A stretch of 64,000 bases of DNA from Styela clava (lineage: Eukaryota): contig NC_135250.1 in NCBI RefSeq assembly GCF_964204865.1, positions 7,564,001 through 7,628,000 on the forward strand. Direction: 5' to 3'. Numbering within the stretch: the stretch's first letter is position 1; each line of letters starts with the position of its first letter. Position numbers and translations under genes: made by a program. The notes under the pieces are model-generated. The model did not search any database, was not told where the DNA came from, and saw only the letters and a list, made by a program, of their open reading frames with translations. Shown here one piece after another: positions 3-27,041 of the stretch.

Positions 3-1556
3 GATCAGGAAACAAAGGAGTCCAGGCGATTAAGTGCACCACCGTCTGTAACTCTCGCCGTTAACTTGGACAAAGAAATTTATTCCAACAACATTAGTGA
101 TCATGATTTAACAGCAACTAGTTTCATGAGCGACAAAGTGTACTTGAATGGAAATGATTTATCCCAACCTTCTCTTAATTCTGTGGCAAGTGAACCATTG
201 GAATCGTATCCAGATTGTCCGTTTCAAACGTCACAGCCTGAAGTTCCACCTAAAGTTCCAGAGCCATATGTTTTACCTGATAATATTTTACTTGTACGGT
301 TGAAGCCTGATAATCACGGAAGATTTGGTTTTAATATAAAGGGTGGAAGTGATCAGAACATGCCTATCACAGTGTCAAAAATTGCTCCTAATTCTCCTGC
401 GGACATCTGTGATCCACGTCTCAACATCGGAGATGAAATTTTACAAATAAATGGCAGAGACGCAAATACACTCACTCATGATCAGGTCGTTAATTTTATA
501 CGTGCTACTAGAGAACAATTTGCTGGAGAGTTGGTGCTATTAACTAGACCTTTTGTTGTTACTACCTACGAAGATGAGGACGATGAAATGGAGGTTCCAA
601 AAATTGAAAACGGGCCTTTACTCGCAGAAGACGAAATTAGTGTAAATAGTCTTGAATACTCTATGTCGGTGCTCAATAATCAATTGGAAAACGGCCGTGA
701 CATGGCTGCTTTCGACAGATTATATCGGAAAAAGCCGGGTCTGTTGATGAAAGATGCAAAACTACCCCACAATGTACCTAAGAATCGGTATAGAGACATT
801 TCACCTTATGATGATACTAGAGTGATACTTAGCAATTGGGAAACGGACTATATTAATGGCAATCATATATTAATGGAAATCCCAAACGCGGGTATTGCAA
901 ATCATTATATTGCTTGTCAAGGTCCCCTTCAAAACACTAGTGGTGATTTTTGGGCCATGGTTTGGGAACAGAAGGCAACATTAATTGTAATGGTAACTAC
1001 TACAATTGAAAGAGGCATGATTAAATGTTTTCAATACTGGCCTAATCCTGACTGTACTATACAGTTTGCAAACATTGCCGTAACATCAAAATCGGAAACA
1101 GCTTCATCTTGTTTCATTTTCCGAGAGTTCGAAATCGGGGCAATAAACTCTGACGGAGATATTGTTGATAAAAGGGATGTATCTCACATTCAATATGTTG
1201 CTTGGCCTGATCACGGTGTCCCCGATGATTCTAGCGACTTTCTTGAGTTCATTCTTTGTGTTAGGCAGAAACGAGTGGCCATGACCGTTCCAACGATAGT
1301 TCACTGTAGTGCGGGCATAGGAAGAACGGGGGTCATGATTGCTGTCGAAACAGCGATGTGTTTAATTGAGGCTAATCAGCCTGTATTTCCTTTACAAATC
1401 ACGCAAAATATGCGAGACCAGCGAGCTATGATGATTCAAACTGCTCTTCAGTTTAGGTTTGTGTGTGAGGCTATTTTACGTGTCTACAGAGAAGGAATTG
1501 CTCAGCCTATGGTTGGTGATACTGATAACGGCAATGAAGCAGAAGAATTGACGTAA
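3..1556 (+). CDS. PTPN4: Non-receptor tyrosine phosphatase PTPN3/PTPN4 family (3' part: PDZ + PTP domain), 5'-truncated by the window edge; no intron in the visible 1.55 kb
   Basis: Frame is open from position 3 (the ORF-track start at 66 is a TTG). PDZ RFGFNIKGG; PTP motifs KNRYRDISPYD, DYING, IACQGP, AWPDHGVP, VHCSAGIGRTG and MIQT..QF. KNRYRDISPYD resembles PTPN4; likely PTPN3/4 co-orthologue. Confidence 0.93.
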   Translation, partial: DQETKESRRLSAPPSVTLAVNLDKEIYSNNISDHDLTATSFMSDKVYLNGNDLSQPSLNSVASEPLESYPDCPFQTSQPEVPPKVPEPYVLPDNILLVRLKPDNHGRFGFNIKGGSDQNMPITVSKIAPNSPADICDPRLNIGDEILQINGRDANTLTHDQVVNFIRATREQFAGELVLLTRPFVVTTYEDEDDEMEVPKIENGPLLAEDEISVNSLEYSMSVLNNQLENGRDMAAFDRLYRKKPGLLMKDAKLPHNVPKNRYRDISPYDDTRVILSNWETDYINGNHILMEIPNAGIANHYIACQGPLQNTSGDFWAMVWEQKATLIVMVTTTIERGMIKCFQYWPNPDCTIQFANIAVTSKSETASSCFIFREFEIGAINSDGDIVDKRDVSHIQYVAWPDHGVPDDSSDFLEFILCVRQKRVAMTVPTIVHCSAGIGRTGVMIAVETAMCLIEANQPVFPLQITQNMRDQRAMMIQTALQFRFVCEAILRVYREGIAQPMVGDTDNGNEAEELT

Positions 1557-6427: not shown

Positions 6428-8326
<1,899 letters not shown>

Positions 8327-10135: not shown

Positions 10136-11539
10136 ATGAAGGAAAGACCTTCACGTTCACCAGGTGAAGAAAACATATCTGAAGACGGAAGTACTGAAAA
10201 CTATCTTAACTCAAAAATAGTGGAAATAAAGGAAATTGAATCTCAAAATGGCGATGGTATTGATGACATAATTGATTCTGGCAAAAGAGCATCAGCAATA
10301 CTTTTCCCGCAGGAACAAGAATACGCAGCAATTCTAAATATGAATTCAGCTGACATTGAAACAAATGGAAAAATTGTGTCAGGTAAAAGTAAAAGCCCTA
10401 AAATGAAACAACGCAAGTCACCCGTGAAACGTCTTCGAAAAAGAGTAGAGCACAGAAAACGTTTACTTGAAAGCGATGATTCCAGTTCATCTGAAGATGA
10501 TTCGATACCATTGAAAAAAGTGAATAAAAAAAACAAATTGGTTTCATCCAATGACAAGCTTAAGGGTAGCAACAGAAAAAAGGCTGCTTCCCGTCCTCCA
10601 AACAAAAGAAAGGCGGGAAACACATCAAAGGGAAAAAAACAGAATAACACGAAAGGTAGTAAGAATAATGAATCCGCTGAAAGTCATCAATGTGTTTTTT
10701 GTGACAAATATTTTACCACACTCCGAAGACTTAACAAACACATGCATATTCATAAAGACGGCCTAGAATATAAGTGTAAAAATTGCAAAGAAGTCTTTAC
10801 ATCTAACGAAGAACTTACTTCGCATTTATGTGCTCCTGAAGCATTTGAGTGTGATCTTTGTGATAAAGCATTCTCAAAGATTGACTTATTGAGAGCTCAT
10901 TCAAAAACACATGTGTCTGAAGCTTTGATAGAATGTACTGAATGTGATAAAGTGTTTCATGTGCAAAGTAGCTTAAATGCTCACATGAAAACACATGGTG
11001 ATATTAAACCTTTTAAATGTCACCTATGCAGCAAAGAATTTCGTTGCCAAAGAAATCTGTCAATGCATCTGCGAGTTCATACAAATGAAAAACCGTTTTC
11101 GTGTCCAACATGCGGCAAGAATTTTACACAACAGAGCAATTTGAATTCACATGCTCGTTCTCATACAGAAGAACGTCCATTTATATGTGGAACTTGCGGA
11201 AAATCTTTCTCGCTGAAGAAAACAATGATTGCACATACAAGAACACACACAAATGAAAAGCCTTTTAAGTGTAAAATATGTGGCAAAGCTTTTGCCCAGA
11301 GAGGTACTGTTAAAAATCACATGCGCATCCACACAAAAGAAATGCCATATGTATGTGTCTATTGCGGTAACAAATTTGCACATCAGCAAAGTTGGGGCTA
11401 TCATATGGCTCTTCATGATAAAAATGGTGACACAGTGGTACAATTTGACAATGGGGAAGAAACGAATATTGAAAATAAATCGGAAGGTGTTCTTGTAAAA
11501 TTGGACTTAATCGGCCAGGAAACAAATGGTTGTATATAG
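10136..11539 (+). CDS. C2H2 zinc-finger protein (about 9 fingers, basic/acidic low-complexity N-terminus), single-exon CDS, 467 aa
   Basis: Nine Cx2Cx12Hx3H/C units with HTNEKPF/HTEERPF linkers. In-frame TAA immediately before the ATG; splice acceptor ttttttaatacag ends at 10105. Confidence 0.9.
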   Translation: MKERPSRSPGEENISEDGSTENYLNSKIVEIKEIESQNGDGIDDIIDSGKRASAILFPQEQEYAAILNMNSADIETNGKIVSGKSKSPKMKQRKSPVKRLRKRVEHRKRLLESDDSSSSEDDSIPLKKVNKKNKLVSSNDKLKGSNRKKAASRPPNKRKAGNTSKGKKQNNTKGSKNNESAESHQCVFCDKYFTTLRRLNKHMHIHKDGLEYKCKNCKEVFTSNEELTSHLCAPEAFECDLCDKAFSKIDLLRAHSKTHVSEALIECTECDKVFHVQSSLNAHMKTHGDIKPFKCHLCSKEFRCQRNLSMHLRVHTNEKPFSCPTCGKNFTQQSNLNSHARSHTEERPFICGTCGKSFSLKKTMIAHTRTHTNEKPFKCKICGKAFAQRGTVKNHMRIHTKEMPYVCVYCGNKFAHQQSWGYHMALHDKNGDTVVQFDNGEETNIENKSEGVLVKLDLIGQETNGCI

Positions 11540-22787: not shown

Positions 22788-24186
22788 CTCTATCTTCACA
22801 ATTGCATACACTCTACACTTGCCGAAATTACTGAAGAAAAGGGAAGTTCATATATTTTTTCCAAAGGAAGATACGGTAAGTCTTGAACCACTGACGTTCT
22901 ACGACTATATATGGCGATTGATATACTCCACTTTGTCCGGTGCATATGCCTTTGTAGGCGAGGCTAGCCGGGAGATTCAGATAATTTATTTTCGTCGTGC
23001 AAGAAACATTATGAACAACACAAGCATAGTAAATCAAGGCAAAAGAAAACAACAGACACATAATGTTTCGACTGCAATTAACGAGGAGCCGCGAAAAACT
23101 ATCAAGTCATCGTGTCAGCGACACCATTAAAGCTGAATGACGTCAAAAAAACGTCAAATGATTAAGGTTGAGTTATATATGATCAGGGCAAAAATTTGGA
23201 AAACGTAAATCGAATCGAGAGAGTAAGCCAAATGAGAAAAAACCTTGTCAAGGCGAACTGTTGAGCAATCTTCGTACATGATAGTTCCGGAAAAGTAATC
23301 GCCTATAACAGCAATGATTCACCCACCAGGCAGTAACAAAAACCTTGAATTTGCTCAGTTTTCGATGCTCCGAGGTGTTGAACAAGTTCGTTTCAATACA
23401 TCGAATCCCTGATTAGCTAAAAACGACGATCGTGAGGAAAACTGCGTTTTCCGCGTGTGCATTTCTCAGTTTTTCATAGAATCAAATATCCATGAGTACA
23501 AACTCTATACTGGTTCTAAAATCTATAGATGCAAAAGTATGTAGGTTCTGGTTCGACTGCTCTTAGTGTAATTTGCGGAAGCGAATGTGCGTGGACGCAA
23601 CTATATTATGCGGGAGAACAGACAAAACTCGGGTTGCTGTAGCAGTTTTGCTGGTACTTCAATACTTCTACTGGCCCAGCCTAAACTACGTTGTGCTATC
23701 GACGTTATGATTGCATATTAGTTGACTACACACATCACTTGGTTTATGATTAAGCTATAATGATGGCTTTCATATTTTTACCGTCGATTCACGAGGATGG
23801 TCGTCAGGGAGTTCCAAAATCAGGTTACAACGCATATTCACGATTTTCTATCCGAACAAGAAACCACTAACAATTTTACAATGTGTAAAGAACTACTCTT
23901 GTAAGATGAACCGGAAAGGAAACGTATATATATATATATATATATATATTATGTATTGCAATTGTATAAATCGAAAGGGCCCCCCGAAAATACATTTTGA
24001 ATCCCAATGCCTCATTTATTTTCGAGTATCGAAAGAAGTACTCTTAACTATTTTTGTTTATAAGTTTAAAAAAATGCCATAGTGTCGACTTAACTGTTGA
24101 ATTTGAAATATTCACCATTGTTGGAAAACCATACTCAGTGTAGTAAAGCTTCAAATCATAACTAAGTCTAGAAATTCAGGCCCGTT

Positions 24187-27041
24187 CTAAATTTCTTCTG
24201 GATTATCACACTCTCGGCGATGTCGATCAGGTGTTACAATTTCACACGCTGAACCGGATGCATAATCAGGACATTCGCATTTAAAATGCCTCTCTCTCAT
24301 TTTATCCAAAAGGGCCTCATTTCGATGAATAGCATATTTTCTTATTTTTGGTAAGATGTCATCAACAAAGGTGGCTTTGATTGGGTCAAGAGGGAATCTT
24401 CCGTTTTGGGTTGGACTTAAGTGAATAACCCATTCCGAATCGACTCGTGTGATCGAATATCCAATCAACTTAGAAATCTTCTCAATCGTGTTTCTTATCA
24501 TCTCTCTTGTGAATAGTTGTCTCAGGGGCGTAAAGCGACACTTTCCACCGTGTTCGCATATACAAATTGCTTTTTTCAAATCAATGATGAATTTTTGAAA
24601 TTCCAAATCCAAAAATTTGTCGATGTACCCTGAATAATAAAAGTAAAATATTGAGTGGTTAGCAAGTATTCACACGTGACACATAATATATAAGTGAATA
24701 GCTTAATTAGTGTGATTGAAAAAAAGACTGCGAAGGTAGGCCCTAATAGAGAGCTTCGGTGAAAAGTCAGTCTTATATATCACTGTCGCTACTGTCAGTA
24801 CGAAATCCATGATATCAAGGTTGAAGTGAATGCTAGCTAGTTCAACAATTATTGCCGAGCGGGTACAGTAGGAGTCGATAAATGTAAGTTTCATAACTCG
24901 GTTATACATAAAAAAAAAACGTTTACATGAAAATAATTGATAACAAATGAGTGCAACAAACACGAGTGTGGGCCTTATTTAAAGTGATTCTTGACAATAA
25001 AACAAATTGTGAAAGTTAACCAACCTGGATAATGGTCTTTGATCACGACAATGGATTTATTTAGCAAACTAGACCCTTGTTGAACCAGCATGTCCCAAGT
25101 ATCGATCTCTTCGTGGTTATTAAAAGCTGGGGAAGAAAGGGCGAAATTTGTAACATAAGCAATTCTCGCATTCATTCTTCTTCTTTTTCTGGAGCATTTC
25201 TCTCTCCAATGCAGATTTTCTTCTTTTAGAGAATGCAATTTACCATGAAGGTTTTTAAGTTTATTTTTATCGACTTTCGATGATTCGATATGATAAAGAA
25301 TTTCCTCTCCTAGTTTCTCTATCGTATTTTCTTGATCTTCGATTGTTCCGTGACTTAAAAATAAACTTTCGTTGCATGTTTTTAGACGCTGCATTGTTGT
25401 GTTTAACTTTTGAGTCAGTCCTGTGTTTTTGCCATCACTCTCCGCTAATTTCCTCTCACAAGTGAAGATAGTACTATTCATTTCAGCGATCTTCAATTCC
25501 AAAATAGCATTGCATCTTATATTGCAAAAAGTTTCCACTATTTCTGTTATTTCGGTGTGGTTTCGTGAACCATTTAGTTCATCCTTCAGAATTTCTTTTA
25601 GTTTTTCCGTTAGATTAGCGAGCTTTTCTTCAACTTTCAAAAGAGCATCCGTGAGGTTTCCGTTACTGGATTCAAGAGTAGCGATGCCAGATTGGCAGTT
25701 TGTGTAATTGGTAAACAACTCATTATAACTATTAAATAAAGTGTTTATCGAATTTTGTAGGCTATTCACTACATTTCTTTGATAGATAAATTCGTCAAGC
25801 ACTTTTATGTGATCTTCATTGCATACTTTTAATTTGCGAGAAGAACGCAATGCCTTTTCTCTAAGGTTTCGCATTTCTCGATTTAGATCCGCTAATGTGT
25901 CATTTGTTGACACCACGATTCCATTCAATTCTTCATTTATCTGGATACATTCTTGGAGTTCAGTTTCTGTCTTGATTCGACCGTTATCGAAGCTTTCGAT
26001 TTCGAATGTGTGATTTGTTTTTAGTTGTTCCACCGTTTCGGTCAAACTTTCGATATCTCCCCTGAGAGCTTCAATTGTAATATTTGCATCTAAGATTTCT
26101 AACACTAAATCAGCATTCAGTGAACCAAGCTCGTTTGATGCATTGTTACATGTTATTAATACTGATGAAATATTCTTGTTTTGTTCTTTCAAACTTTTAA
26201 TATCGTCATTCAAATTTTCTTTCTCCCTGTATAATAAATTTATATGCTTTCCCATCGATTCCCTTTTCTCGTTACAATGTACTGCATCTGATGTTGCGTT
26301 CTCTTTTAATGTCATCTCATCGTGTAAATTCTGGATCGTAGAAGTGAGATTTTCAGCGCATACTTTGTTTTTCTGCATCAGTTCTGCTACTTTTGTCTCT
26401 GCTATTACATTTTCTATGATTTTCTCCTCCAATTCGCCGACGAGGCCATCAATTTCTATCCTTCCTGTTTCAGACTCATTTCTCAGTTTTGTATTTTCCT
26501 TCTTTAAACGTGCGATAATATCGAGAAGAAGTTGATTATCTGTTGTTAAATTTTTTATTTTTTCTGTTGCTATATTCTGCAATTCTAATGAGTTTTGTTG
26601 AATGACTTCAAGAGTTTGGTAAGCATGCCTCACAGCAGTAATGAAAGACTCAGTCAGTGTGGCTTGAGATTCGAGGCACAATCTGACTGTCTTATTCATT
26701 TCTTGAATTCCAGTTTCAGATACTCTTAGTTTTAAAGCTAATTCAGAATTTAATCTTCCTGTACCTTGTAGATTCGTTTCGCAATTATTCAATTCTCGTA
26801 CTTTTGTCTGTAACATTTCTTTTGACGAAGTTAAATTTGCTTCAAGTGTCGCGCTTCTCAACTCTTCTTGTTTGAGTAAGAGTATAGCATCTTCTGAACA
26901 ACCTTCGAACCGTTTTCCGTTGGCATTACCCTGGGGATTTGGATCTGCTGGTCCTTCTCCTGGATTAGGATTAGCGGCATTAGAATTCTGGGACGCAACT
27001 GAACAAACTAGTACGAACAAAACCAATGTGTGCAAAATCAT
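24187..27041 (-). CDS. Uncharacterised secreted coiled-coil glycoprotein with C-terminal split EGF-like domain, 2 coding exons (27041-25025, 24629-24187), 819 aa
   Basis: Signal peptide MILHTLVLFVLVCSVAS; ~570-aa heptad-rich region; ~20 N-x-S/T sequons. Donor CCAG|GTTGGT and acceptor ttattattcag|GG join the 688-aa and 141-aa ORFs in frame (HYP-G-YIDKFLDLEF). Acceptor ttagtttgtcag lies just upstream of the ATG. Confidence 0.85.

What the first reader, a model, noticed from the sequence alone, without database searches (positions are those of the whole stretch)
24187..27041. Orphan secreted polyprotein: peptide + giant disulfide-stitched coiled coil + split-EGF head
Seen: joining the two ORFs gives an 819-aa protein with a signal peptide, a short Pro/Asn/Gly segment ending in GKR, ~570 aa of coiled coil with ~20 N-glycosylation sequons, a polybasic site SRKRRR (aa 617-622), and a ~200-aa globular C-terminus with EGF-type cysteines. 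There is no TM segment. I recognise no family with this architecture. Inference: a convertase-processed precursor releasing up to three products, e.g. a tunic/extracellular-matrix rod, adhesive or signalling ligand. This is the best candidate in the window for an undescribed system.
Basis: partly seen in the sequence, partly recalled or inferred. Interest (0 to 1): 0.75.

Follow-up and report, generated by a model that had tools for sequence, protein, structure and literature searches.

The report
Secreted coiled-coil rod, split-EGF head

Summary
The two minus-strand ORFs (27041-25025 and 24629-24187) are joined by a 395-nt GT..AG phase-1 intron. Contigs from 3 of 4 laid runs carry exactly this junction. 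The product equals the 819-aa RefSeq model 'uncharacterized protein LOC120341211 [Styela clava]', so the gene is annotated but unstudied.

Also confirmed:
- a signal peptide and no TM segment;
- about 570 aa of heptad repeats;
- 19 sequons in the rod, against 8.9±2.6 in shuffles;
- RKRRR at aa 618-622;
- an EGF module split between Cys3 and Cys4 by 86 aa.

'Orphan' is only half right. The rod has no relative anywhere I searched. The split-EGF head is a family: two fragments from unnamed assemblies, plus at least seven paralogous terminal exons in this genome. These include a four-copy cluster on C19 and the 310-aa secreted protein LOC120340828. Where checked (4 paralogs), they share the phase-1 intron position.

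The GKR 'peptide' is no more than chance, so 'three products' is not supported.

New here: the two public versions differ at 38 of 110 residues (aa 339-448), against 13 of 709 elsewhere.

Best reading: a disulfide-linked, glycosylated parallel coiled-coil rod carrying split-EGF heads, possibly released by a convertase. The scan noted this only on this same window.

The parts
27042..27082 (-). 5' UTR, at least 41 nt
   Evidence: The contig of run X3 (record 16) reaches 27082. No contig lies between 27083 and 27340.
26991..27041 (-). Signal peptide, aa 1-17 (MILHTLVLFVLVCSVAS)
   Evidence: It holds the highest Kyte-Doolittle 19-mer of the protein (1.74) and the only hydrophobic segment. Translation checked. 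The cleavage site after Ser17 is inferred from the -3/-1 rule, which I recall; it was not computed.
26910..26990 (-). Pro/Asn/Gly-rich N-terminal segment, aa 18-44, ending in GKR
   Evidence: Translation. G[KR][KR] is found in 8,196 of 20,000 shuffles, so the processing site is not above chance.
25194..26909 (-). Heptad-repeat (coiled-coil) rod, aa 45-616, with 19 sequons and 14 Cys
   Evidence: The AF2 secondary structure gives helices 50-186, 191-343, 357-489, 496-534, 541-560, 568-586 and 592-636, but that model has low confidence.
25698..26027 (-). Hypervariable patch of the rod, aa 339-448
   Evidence: 38 of the 51 differences between P0004 and P0001 lie here.
25176..25190 (-). Polybasic hinge RKRRR, aa 618-622, a candidate proprotein-convertase site
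   Evidence: The other allele reads RKRKR.
25025..25175 (-). First 50 residues of the head (aa 623-672) plus the first base of the split Gly673 codon
24630..25024 (-). Intron, 395 nt, GT..AG, phase 1
   Evidence: It is skipped in contigs from 3 of 4 runs.
24538..24564 (-). N-terminal half of the EGF module (CICEHGGKC, Cys695/697/703)
24280..24537 (-). 86-aa insertion between Cys3 and Cys4 of the EGF module (aa 704-789)
   Evidence: AF2 gives mixed helix and strand at pLDDT 59-81 (10-residue block means).
24241..24279 (-). C-terminal half of the EGF module (CECPDYASGSACE, Cys790/792/801)
24214..24225 (-). Second R-X-R-R motif (RHRR, aa 808-811), 8 residues before the C-terminus and ahead of the extra Cys813
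   Evidence: It is present in both alleles.
24187..24189 (-). Stop codon
23959..24186 (-). 3' UTR, about 228 nt
   Evidence: The contig of run X1 (record 1) runs to 23959, next to the (TA)n at 23925-23949.

Best explanation
This is a real, expressed, two-exon gene of Styela clava (RefSeq LOC120341211, 'uncharacterized'). It encodes an 819-aa secreted glycoprotein.

Proposed mechanism:
- The signal peptide takes the protein into the secretory pathway.
- Residues ~45-616 form a long parallel, probably two-stranded, coiled-coil rod. Glycans sit on its outward heptad positions and 14 Cys sit at or beside the core, so they could cross-link the chains.
- A polybasic hinge (RKRRR) joins the rod to a ~197-aa head.
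- The core of the head is an EGF module with an 86-aa domain nested between Cys3 and Cys4. The same module forms the terminal exon of a small family of short secreted Styela proteins.
- The rod would therefore multimerise and space out a binding head that otherwise exists as a small soluble protein.
- A proprotein convertase may cut at the hinge and free the head, as in angiopoietin-like 3/4.

Shown here: the gene model, its transcription and splicing, the sequence features and the head family.

Inferred: secretion, oligomer state, disulfide stitching, cleavage and a binding role.
For: Transcript and junction: (3 of 4 runs), and identity to the RefSeq model.

Secretion: an N-terminal hydrophobic segment only. 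Sequons are enriched about twofold (19 against 8.9 +/- 2.6), and 19 of 20 sequon Asn lie off the a/d positions in my crude register. 22 of 22 Cys are kept between two alleles that differ at 51 residues.

Coiled coil: lag-7 z of 4.8. 442 residues fit a heptad frame. Position a holds I15, L13 and N9 of 64; position d holds L31 of 61. By established coiled-coil rules, which I recall, this pattern favours parallel dimers.

Head family:
- Exhaustive phmmer finds P0002 and P0003 (E 1e-11 and 1e-10).
- Own-genome profile hits.
- hhalign probability 95.7%, E 8.5e-9.
- BLASTP of P0004 against P0007, E 3e-4.
- Pfam EGF is over its gathering score as two separate stretches in paralogs L010 and L012.
- The phase-1 intron lies 22-24 residues before the first Cys in the window gene and in 4 paralogs.
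- Signal-peptide-like first exons lie upstream of 3 paralogs.

Hinge: a run of 5 or more K/R occurs in only 498 of 20,000 shuffles, and it sits exactly at the boundary between rod and head.
Against: No tool here predicts signal peptides, coiled-coil oligomer state or convertase cleavage. My heptad register is a home-made score.

The AF2 models are poor: pLDDT 59.7 for exon 2 and 40.5 for the whole protein. No fold match stands above noise.

Three long helices of similar length (137, 153 and 133 aa) could equally fold back into an intramolecular bundle.

The other public allele reads RKRKR, which lacks R-X-[KR]-R at the hinge.

Homology between the head and the paralogs is shown only for exon 2. 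The 50 residues before the intron do not align.

The link between the window clade and the C19 clade is weak by plain search (E 0.023).

Tissue, stage and partners are unknown.
Confidence: 0.55

Rival explanations
1. It is a purely structural extracellular fibre or coat component, for example of tunic, egg coat or feeding mucus. The rod is the working part, the polybasic stretch binds glycans or matrix and is not a cleavage site, and the head merely caps or cross-links the rod.
For: The rod is long, glycosylated and Cys-rich. The mature protein has an odd number of Cys (21), which fits intermolecular bonds. The canonical furin motif is not kept in the other allele. Some runs of the same species hold next to none of the transcript's words (X13 and X14), which is compatible with tissue-restricted expression.
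Against: The head is the only part with relatives, and in them it stands alone as a small secreted protein, which suggests it has a function of its own. There is no evidence for fibre assembly. The gene is single-copy and fast-evolving: 16 non-synonymous against 10 synonymous among 26 listed transcript variants.
Confidence: 0.22
2. It is a polymorphic recognition molecule for self/non-self or gamete recognition. Its specificity would lie in the hypervariable surface patch of the rod (aa 339-448), with the head acting as anchor or effector.
For: 38 of 110 residues differ in the patch, against 13 of 709 elsewhere (hypergeometric P 1.7e-25). 33 of the 38 changes are at the surface heptad positions b, c, e, f or g, and the 5 core changes are conservative. 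All Cys are kept. The ratio of non-synonymous to synonymous variants in transcripts is high. Seven residues typical of P0001 outside or inside the patch segregate in the RNA runs, so the variation is allelic.
Against: Only two alleles were compared. The divergent patch of P0001 was not seen in any of the 4 runs laid, apart from V424A. It could be an assembly or annotation artefact of the older genome, or introgression. No donor copy exists in this assembly. No link to fertilisation or fusion is known for this gene, and 5 paper searches found nothing on it.
Confidence: 0.12
3. It is a peptide-hormone or polyprotein precursor. It would release an amidated N-terminal peptide (cut at GKR), the rod and the head.
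For: G-K-R follows a 24-residue Pro/Asn/Gly-rich stretch directly behind the signal peptide. This segment is identical in both alleles.
Against: G[KR][KR] occurs in 8,196 of 20,000 shuffles. No relative has this segment, so conservation cannot be judged. The first 95 residues are identical between the alleles anyway. No neuropeptide family matched.
Confidence: 0.07
4. It is an intracellular coiled-coil protein, as the older RefSeq name 'CAP-Gly domain-containing linker protein 1-like' and the precomputed CCDC39 hit would suggest.
For: There are generic coiled-coil matches: SMC at 33.7 bits against a cut-off of 567, and GAS, ATG16 and Fez1 at E 0.02-0.6. PF24161 (CCDC39) is listed for P0001.
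Against: There is no CAP-Gly or CCDC39 hit at E up to 10. The true CCDC39 gene is on C17. The protein has a signal peptide, sequon enrichment, 22 conserved Cys and an EGF-type module. RefSeq has itself renamed it 'uncharacterized'.
Confidence: 0.03

Closest known systems
Styela clava LOC120340828 (P0007, 310 aa, uncharacterized) and the unannotated C19 cluster (G000:C19:11516300-11524100)
   Same: They share the split EGF module (C..C..GG.C, an insertion, then C.C....[ST]G..CE). It lies in a terminal or near-terminal exon behind a phase-1 intron 22-24 residues before the first Cys. They have signal peptides.
   Different: They are short (about 230-310 aa) with no coiled-coil rod and no polybasic hinge. 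Their insertions are 110-130 aa, not 86. Identity to the window's exon 2 is only 21-30%.
Angiopoietin-like proteins 3 and 4 (recalled, not from a call)
   Same: The layout matches: a signal peptide, an N-terminal oligomerising coiled coil, a proprotein-convertase site in the linker, and a C-terminal globular head that acts on its own after cleavage.
   Different: The head here is not a fibrinogen-related domain: no Pfam hit at E up to 10. The rod is several times longer, Cys-studded and heavily glycosylated. There is no sequence similarity.
EGF-like domains (Pfam PF00008), and laminin LE modules that carry a nested L4 domain (the latter recalled)
   Same: Both halves carry EGF signatures and align to the matching halves of Notch EGF repeats. 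In two paralogs Pfam EGF passes its gathering score as two stretches. A domain nested inside an EGF-type module has a precedent in laminin, as I recall.
   Different: The window protein itself scores only 10.6-10.8 bits against a cut-off of 21.5. Cys1 and Cys2 are one residue apart. The insertion matches no Pfam family, neither Laminin_B nor SEA.
Clusterin (recalled)
   Same: It is a secreted, N-glycosylated, helical coiled-coil protein that is cut at an internal basic site, with the chains held together by disulfides.
   Different: There is no sequence match. Clusterin is about half the size, its Cys are clustered, and it has no EGF module.
Ciona v-Themis, a polymorphic fibrinogen-like self-sterility ligand (recalled)
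   Same: It is a secreted ascidian protein with a localised hypervariable region.
   Different: The domain make-up differs, and there is no evidence that this gene acts in fertilisation.

Membership tests
EGF-like domain (PF00008) | A contiguous ~30-40-aa module that reaches Pfam's gathering score (21.5 bits) | tested here: not met
   The window's exon 2 scores 10.6-10.8 bits, E 0.66-0.73. The module is interrupted by 86 aa.
EGF-like domain (PF00008) | Six-Cys signature: C-x-x-G-G-x-C (Cys2-Cys3) and C-x-C-x(4,5)-G-x-x-C (Cys4-Cys6) | tested here: met
   CICEHGGKC and CECPDYASGSACE. Both halves align to Notch EGF halves, though not significantly (E 1.9). Paralogs L010 (25.0 bits) and L012 (23.6 bits) pass the gathering score with two stretches.
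EGF-like domain (PF00008) | Disulfide pattern 1-3, 2-4, 5-6 and the two-hairpin fold | tested here: inconclusive
   In the AF2 model both Cys clusters fall in regions of pLDDT below 50 (residues 24-39 and 123-146 of exon 2).
Styela split-EGF small secreted proteins (family defined here) | Split-EGF Cys pattern with conserved P, W, (L/F)-(D/N)-P and L-N motifs in the insertion | tested here: met
   Alignments A1, A3 and A4. hhalign gives 95.7%, E 8.5e-9. BLASTP against P0007 gives E 3e-4.
Styela split-EGF small secreted proteins (family defined here) | Phase-1 intron 22-24 residues upstream of the first Cys | tested here: met
   Acceptor sites were read in the window gene and in L010, L012, L017 and L019.
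Styela split-EGF small secreted proteins (family defined here) | Short protein: a signal peptide followed directly by the head | tested here: not met
   The window gene carries about 600 extra residues (propeptide-like segment, rod and hinge) between the signal peptide and the head.
Angiopoietin-like / fibrinogen-related proteins | C-terminal fibrinogen-related domain | tested here: not met
   No such Pfam hit at E up to 10 for P0001 or exon 2. No PDB sequence hit.
Proprotein-convertase substrate | R-X-[K/R]-R motif at a domain boundary | tested here: met
   R618-K-R-R621(-R622) in the window allele. The other allele reads RKRKR. A second motif, RHRR, lies at 808-811 in both alleles.
Proprotein-convertase substrate | Actual cleavage in vivo | not testable with these tools
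   This needs protein chemistry.
CLIP1 / CAP-Gly linker proteins (older RefSeq name) | CAP-Gly domain | tested here: not met
   No hit at E up to 10.
CCDC39 (PF24161, precomputed for P0001) | A match to the family profile over its 27-bit cut-off | tested here: not met
   Not among the hits at E up to 10. The genome's CCDC39 gene is at C17:3809298-3811925 (433.9 bits).
SEA domain (considered for the insertion from its predicted helix/strand order) | A match to PF01390 | tested here: not met
   No SEA hit at E up to 10 in any of the 9 family members scanned. A profile-profile test could not be built, because only 1 partial SEA exon was found in the genome.
Amidated neuropeptide precursor | A conserved peptide followed by G-[KR]-[KR] | tested here: inconclusive
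   The motif is present once and is expected by chance in 41% of shuffles. No relatives exist to test conservation.

The most novel reading that the evidence does not exclude
The gene could be a recognition locus of a new type. A secreted, disulfide-stitched coiled-coil rod would carry its specificity on a 110-residue hypervariable surface patch, where heptad core and Cys are kept and the surface is rewritten between alleles. The rod would present a lineage-specific split-EGF head. Styela would use it for self/non-self or sperm-egg discrimination.
Probability: 0.1. Interest if true: 0.8.

Novelty: new variant of a known kind. Interest (0 to 1): 0.4.

Why it matters
The finding defines a small, so far unnamed family of secreted sea-squirt proteins built on an EGF module with a domain nested between Cys3 and Cys4. 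It also shows one member that has acquired a ~570-residue glycosylated, Cys-studded coiled coil and a polybasic hinge.

This gives a clean natural example of a soluble binding module being turned into a multivalent or rod-mounted one. It also gives a concrete candidate for studies of ascidian extracellular matrices, coats or recognition.

The localised allelic hypervariability, if confirmed in populations, would make this a testable candidate recognition gene in a solitary ascidian.

It is not a new kind of system. Every building block is known: signal peptide, coiled coil, convertase site and EGF.

Tried and rejected
Pfam on both exons and on P0001 gave only sub-threshold coiled-coil and EGF hits. 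NCBIfam gave only generic SMC/Rad50 coiled-coil matches far under their cut-offs.

The ESM Atlas gave no usable lead for exon 1 (best 0.86, recognition 1505) or exon 2. PDB sequence searches found 0 hits for exon 2 and for P0004. Profiles A3 and A4 hit only EGF halves at E of 0.15 or more.

Structure: AF2 of exon 2 with 2 homologues gave pLDDT 59.7. AF2 of P0004 with 3 rows gave pLDDT 40.5. VIA-align against 48,161 chains gave a best Z of 7.0 (CHAD, ClyA), below the level the tool quotes as noise for helical models. Foldseek against the PDB gave 0 matches at E up to 0.001.

Searches for more relatives:
- exon 1 found 1 of 8,000 scored candidates;
- A1 found 2 of 299;
- A4 found 3 of 2,084;
- JGI metagenomes gave 170 pattern matches and 0 relatives;
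- viral contigs gave 102 pattern matches and 0 relatives.

A viral-glycoprotein origin is rejected for lack of any relative. A thyroglobulin-like precursor of S. clava (PMC12992692; I read the outline and abstract only) is a Tg1-domain protein and unrelated.

Five paper searches found nothing on this gene or on a split EGF of this kind: LOC/XP ids, species plus the old name, species plus features, split or inserted EGF and Hemps/Herdmania.

The 44-aa cluster mates P0005 and P0006 are unrelated to this protein. Internal repeats beyond the heptad were not found: the best lags are all multiples of 7. Rows C1:4525556 and C13:2294323 (E about 0.025) were not inspected.
Full report
**What is there.** On the minus strand the window holds a 688-aa ORF (27041-24975) and a 141-aa ORF (24612-24187). 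The sequence has GT at 25024-25023 and a pyrimidine-rich tract ending in AG at 24631-24630. Splicing 25025 to 24629 keeps the frame (phase 1; 2017 + 443 nt) and gives 819 codons. Exon 1 (672 aa), a split Gly codon and exon 2 (146 aa) equal the public protein P0004 residue for residue. P0004 is XP_039265622.2, 'uncharacterized protein LOC120341211 [Styela clava]'. The older version of the same record is P0001, XP_039265622.1. It was auto-named 'CAP-Gly domain-containing linker protein 1-like' and is 93% identical.

**Transcription.** One search found 14 runs, and I laid contigs from four of them (X1-X4, from two studies) on 23500-28500. Contigs from 3 of the 4 runs skip exactly 395 bases between 24628 and 25024, with GT..AG ends on the minus strand. 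X4 has no contig across the junction. One 2,514-nt contig covers the whole CDS up to 27082, and another runs 3' to 23959. No contig lies between 27083 and 27340. The gene is therefore a two-exon unit with a 5' UTR of at least 41 nt and a 3' UTR of about 228 nt. The tool only guesses that these runs are RNA, but the missing intron shows spliced transcripts. Two other runs of the same species hold next to none of its words, which fits restricted expression but does not prove it.

**Features of the protein.**
- The only hydrophobic 19-mer is at the N-terminus (KD 1.74). No other window exceeds about 1.2 in exon 1 or 0.86 in exon 2, so there is a signal-peptide-like start and no TM segment.
- There are 20 N-X-S/T sequons. 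19 lie in aa 46-616, against 8.9 +/- 2.6 (maximum 18) in 2,000 shuffles.
- The BLOSUM autocorrelation peaks at lags 7, 14, 21 and 28 (z 4.8, 4.2, 4.2 and 4.1).
- With a simple register score, 442 residues (aa 88-581) fit a heptad frame, against 44-215 in 20 shuffles.
- Position a holds I15, L13 and N9 of 64 residues. Position d holds L31 of 61. By the usual coiled-coil rules, which I recall, this pattern favours parallel two-stranded coils.
- In that register, 19 of 20 sequon Asn are off the core. The rod's Cys fall at d, g or a positions, apart from Cys506, which falls at c.
- From 359 to 490 the frame is unbroken, and Cys365, 407 and 449 sit at d, six heptads apart.
- AF2 draws helices 50-186, 191-343, 357-489 and shorter ones up to 636, but at pLDDT 40.5.
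- The mature chain has 21 Cys, an odd number.

It does not exclude an intramolecular fold-back of the three long helices, which have similar lengths.

**The basic sites.** RKRRR (aa 618-622) lies exactly between the last heptad segment and the head. A run of five or more K/R appears in 498 of 20,000 shuffles of the mature sequence. R-X-[KR]-R appears anywhere in 5,099 of 20,000. In the other allele the site reads RKRKR, which is still polybasic but lacks R-X-[KR]-R. A second motif, RHRR (808-811), precedes the last eight residues, which include the extra Cys813, and it is present in both alleles. Cleavage at the hinge is therefore a reasonable inference. The N-terminal 'peptide' is not.

**The head is not an orphan.** An exhaustive phmmer search with exon 2 over 1.84 billion representatives gave three proteins at E up to 0.001. 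One is the gene itself. The other two are fragments from unnamed assemblies: P0002 (147 aa, 33% identity, E 1e-11) and P0003 (128 aa, 28% identity, E 1e-10). They keep all six EGF-type Cys and a set of residues in the insertion.

A profile of these three found a weak hit in the own genome on C19 (E 0.023). Its open frame has a canonical EGF start (C-x4-P-C-L-Y-G-G-K-C), then about 115 residues, then a canonical EGF end (C-T-C-x2-G-F-T-G-x-R-C-E). hhalign of A1 against it gives 95.7% probability and E 8.5e-9 over 103 columns.

With that row added (A3), the own genome gives 19 rows at E up to 10 and 9 at E up to 1e-3. Two of the nine are in the model by construction. The other seven rows mark six loci:
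- three more copies on C19 (11518712 +, 11520770 -, 11523563 -), so that four copies lie within about 7.5 kb;
- C6:7725001;
- C6:13165054;
- C3:15276772/15276984.

C1:11666066 (E 0.009) is the annotated 310-aa secreted protein LOC120340828 (P0007). It aligns to P0004 aa 675-755 at E 3e-4 in a plain pairwise BLASTP.

Of the open frames I translated, four keep all six Cys (L010, L012, L017, L019) and L016 lacks one. L011 has a degenerate first half. The C6:13165054/13164794 locus is degenerate, and its second half (C6:13164794) has stops. The C3 locus has a TAA between its two halves.

In L010 and L012 Pfam EGF passes its gathering score (25.0 and 23.6 bits against 21.5) as two separate stretches. 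The first stretch covers profile positions 1-16 or 1-20. The second half is also picked up by EGF_laminin positions 17-35. So the module is an EGF split between Cys3 and Cys4, as both first-stage notes on this window said.

The acceptor site of the terminal exon is in phase 1 and lies 22-24 residues before the first Cys in the window gene and in L010, L012, L017 and L019. Signal-peptide-like first exons lie 640-880 nt upstream in three paralogs. These are small secreted proteins of about 230-310 aa.

**How the window gene relates to the family.** It looks like a family member with about 600 extra residues between the signal peptide and the head. Only exon 2 is demonstrably homologous. The 50 residues between the hinge and the intron do not align significantly to P0007. 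Their length is similar to my by-eye model of C19 copy 1, but that is not evidence of homology.

**What the rod and the insertion resemble.** The answer is nothing specific.
- The rod is single-copy (11 candidates scored, only itself at E up to 0.01).
- It has no relative among 8,000 scored candidates.
- It matches only generic coiled-coil profiles far below their cut-offs.
- The precomputed PF24161 is CCDC39. It does not reappear at E up to 10, and the real CCDC39 gene is on C17.
- The insertion matches no Pfam family in any of 9 members scanned and no PDB sequence.
- Its AF2 model (pLDDT 59.7, with 59-81 (10-residue block means) in the insertion) has no fold match above noise.
- Its predicted order of helices and strands made me consider a SEA-like fold. 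There is no sequence support, and I could not build a SEA profile from this genome.
- No relative was found in viral or JGI metagenome contigs.

**Polymorphism.** P0004 and P0001 differ at 51 of 819 residues. 38 of these lie in aa 339-448 (35% of 110 residues). The other 13 are spread over the remaining 709 (1.8%). The hypergeometric P is 1.7e-25. In the register set by Cys365, 407 and 449, 33 of the 38 are at b, c, e, f or g. The five core changes are conservative (L/M, V/M, M/I, H/Y, V/L). All 22 Cys and 18 of 20 sequons are kept.

Among the 26 transcript variants that the tool listed (28 more were not shown), 16 change the amino acid and 10 do not. Seven of them reproduce residues of P0001 (807, 641, 581, 579, 576, 538, 424). 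The variation is therefore allelic and the gene evolves fast. However, the divergent patch itself was not seen in the four runs. It rests on one older public model and needs population data.

**Comparison with known systems.** In working principle the closest case I know is angiopoietin-like 3/4 (recalled): a signal peptide, an oligomerising coiled coil, a convertase site and an autonomous globular head. Membership fails, because there is no fibrinogen-related domain. Clusterin and laminin LE/L4 (both recalled) share single traits. By descent, the only relatives are the Styela split-EGF proteins described above, none of which has a name or a paper.

**Verdict.** This is a real, expressed, already annotated but unstudied gene. 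Its head belongs to a small lineage-restricted split-EGF family, and its rod is unique. Every building block is of a known kind, so I rate it a new variant of a known kind, with moderate interest. The hypervariable patch is the feature most worth following up.

Noticed in passing
G000:C19:11516300-11524100 (loci L008, L010, L012, L016, L017): Four split-EGF terminal exons lie within about 7.5 kb, two on each strand. None was returned by the protein search that included their own translations, so they may be unannotated. A stray copy of the last 11 residues (…TGPRCEKCAV) lies about 2 kb upstream at L008:6178-6312.
   Followed up: partly
G000:C3:15276772-15277250 and G000:C6:13164794-13165263: Two decayed copies of the split-EGF exon. 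The C3 copy has a TAA between its two halves. In the C6 copy, the second-half match has three stops and the first-half open frame has lost its Cys.
   Followed up: partly
window 27341-27841 and 28343-28500: These stretches are covered by many contigs at 20-40 times the depth of the gene, with many loose ends and inconsistent joints in all four runs. This is probably a dispersed transcribed repeat just upstream of the gene.
   Followed up: no
window 66-1556, 6431-8326, 10136-11539: Three long same-strand ORFs: a PDZ plus tyrosine-phosphatase protein, a MYST (MOZ/SAS) acetyltransferase, and a C2H2 zinc-finger protein.
   Followed up: partly
window 35117-36109 (+): A 330-aa ORF with no Pfam family at E up to 0.001.
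   Followed up: no
window 24214-24225 (aa 808-811): A second canonical R-X-R-R motif lies eight residues before the C-terminus, ahead of an extra seventh Cys (Cys813). P0002 and P0003 lack this Cys because they end earlier.
   Followed up: partly
protein cluster of P0001: The 90% cluster of this protein also holds two 44-aa proteins, P0005 and P0006, which are unrelated in sequence. This looks like a clustering artefact of the collection.
   Followed up: yes
window 27081-27100: The longest transcript contig ends at 27082, right behind a T-rich tract plus AG that looks like an acceptor site. The transcript may have an upstream or trans-spliced leader that the contigs do not show.
   Followed up: no
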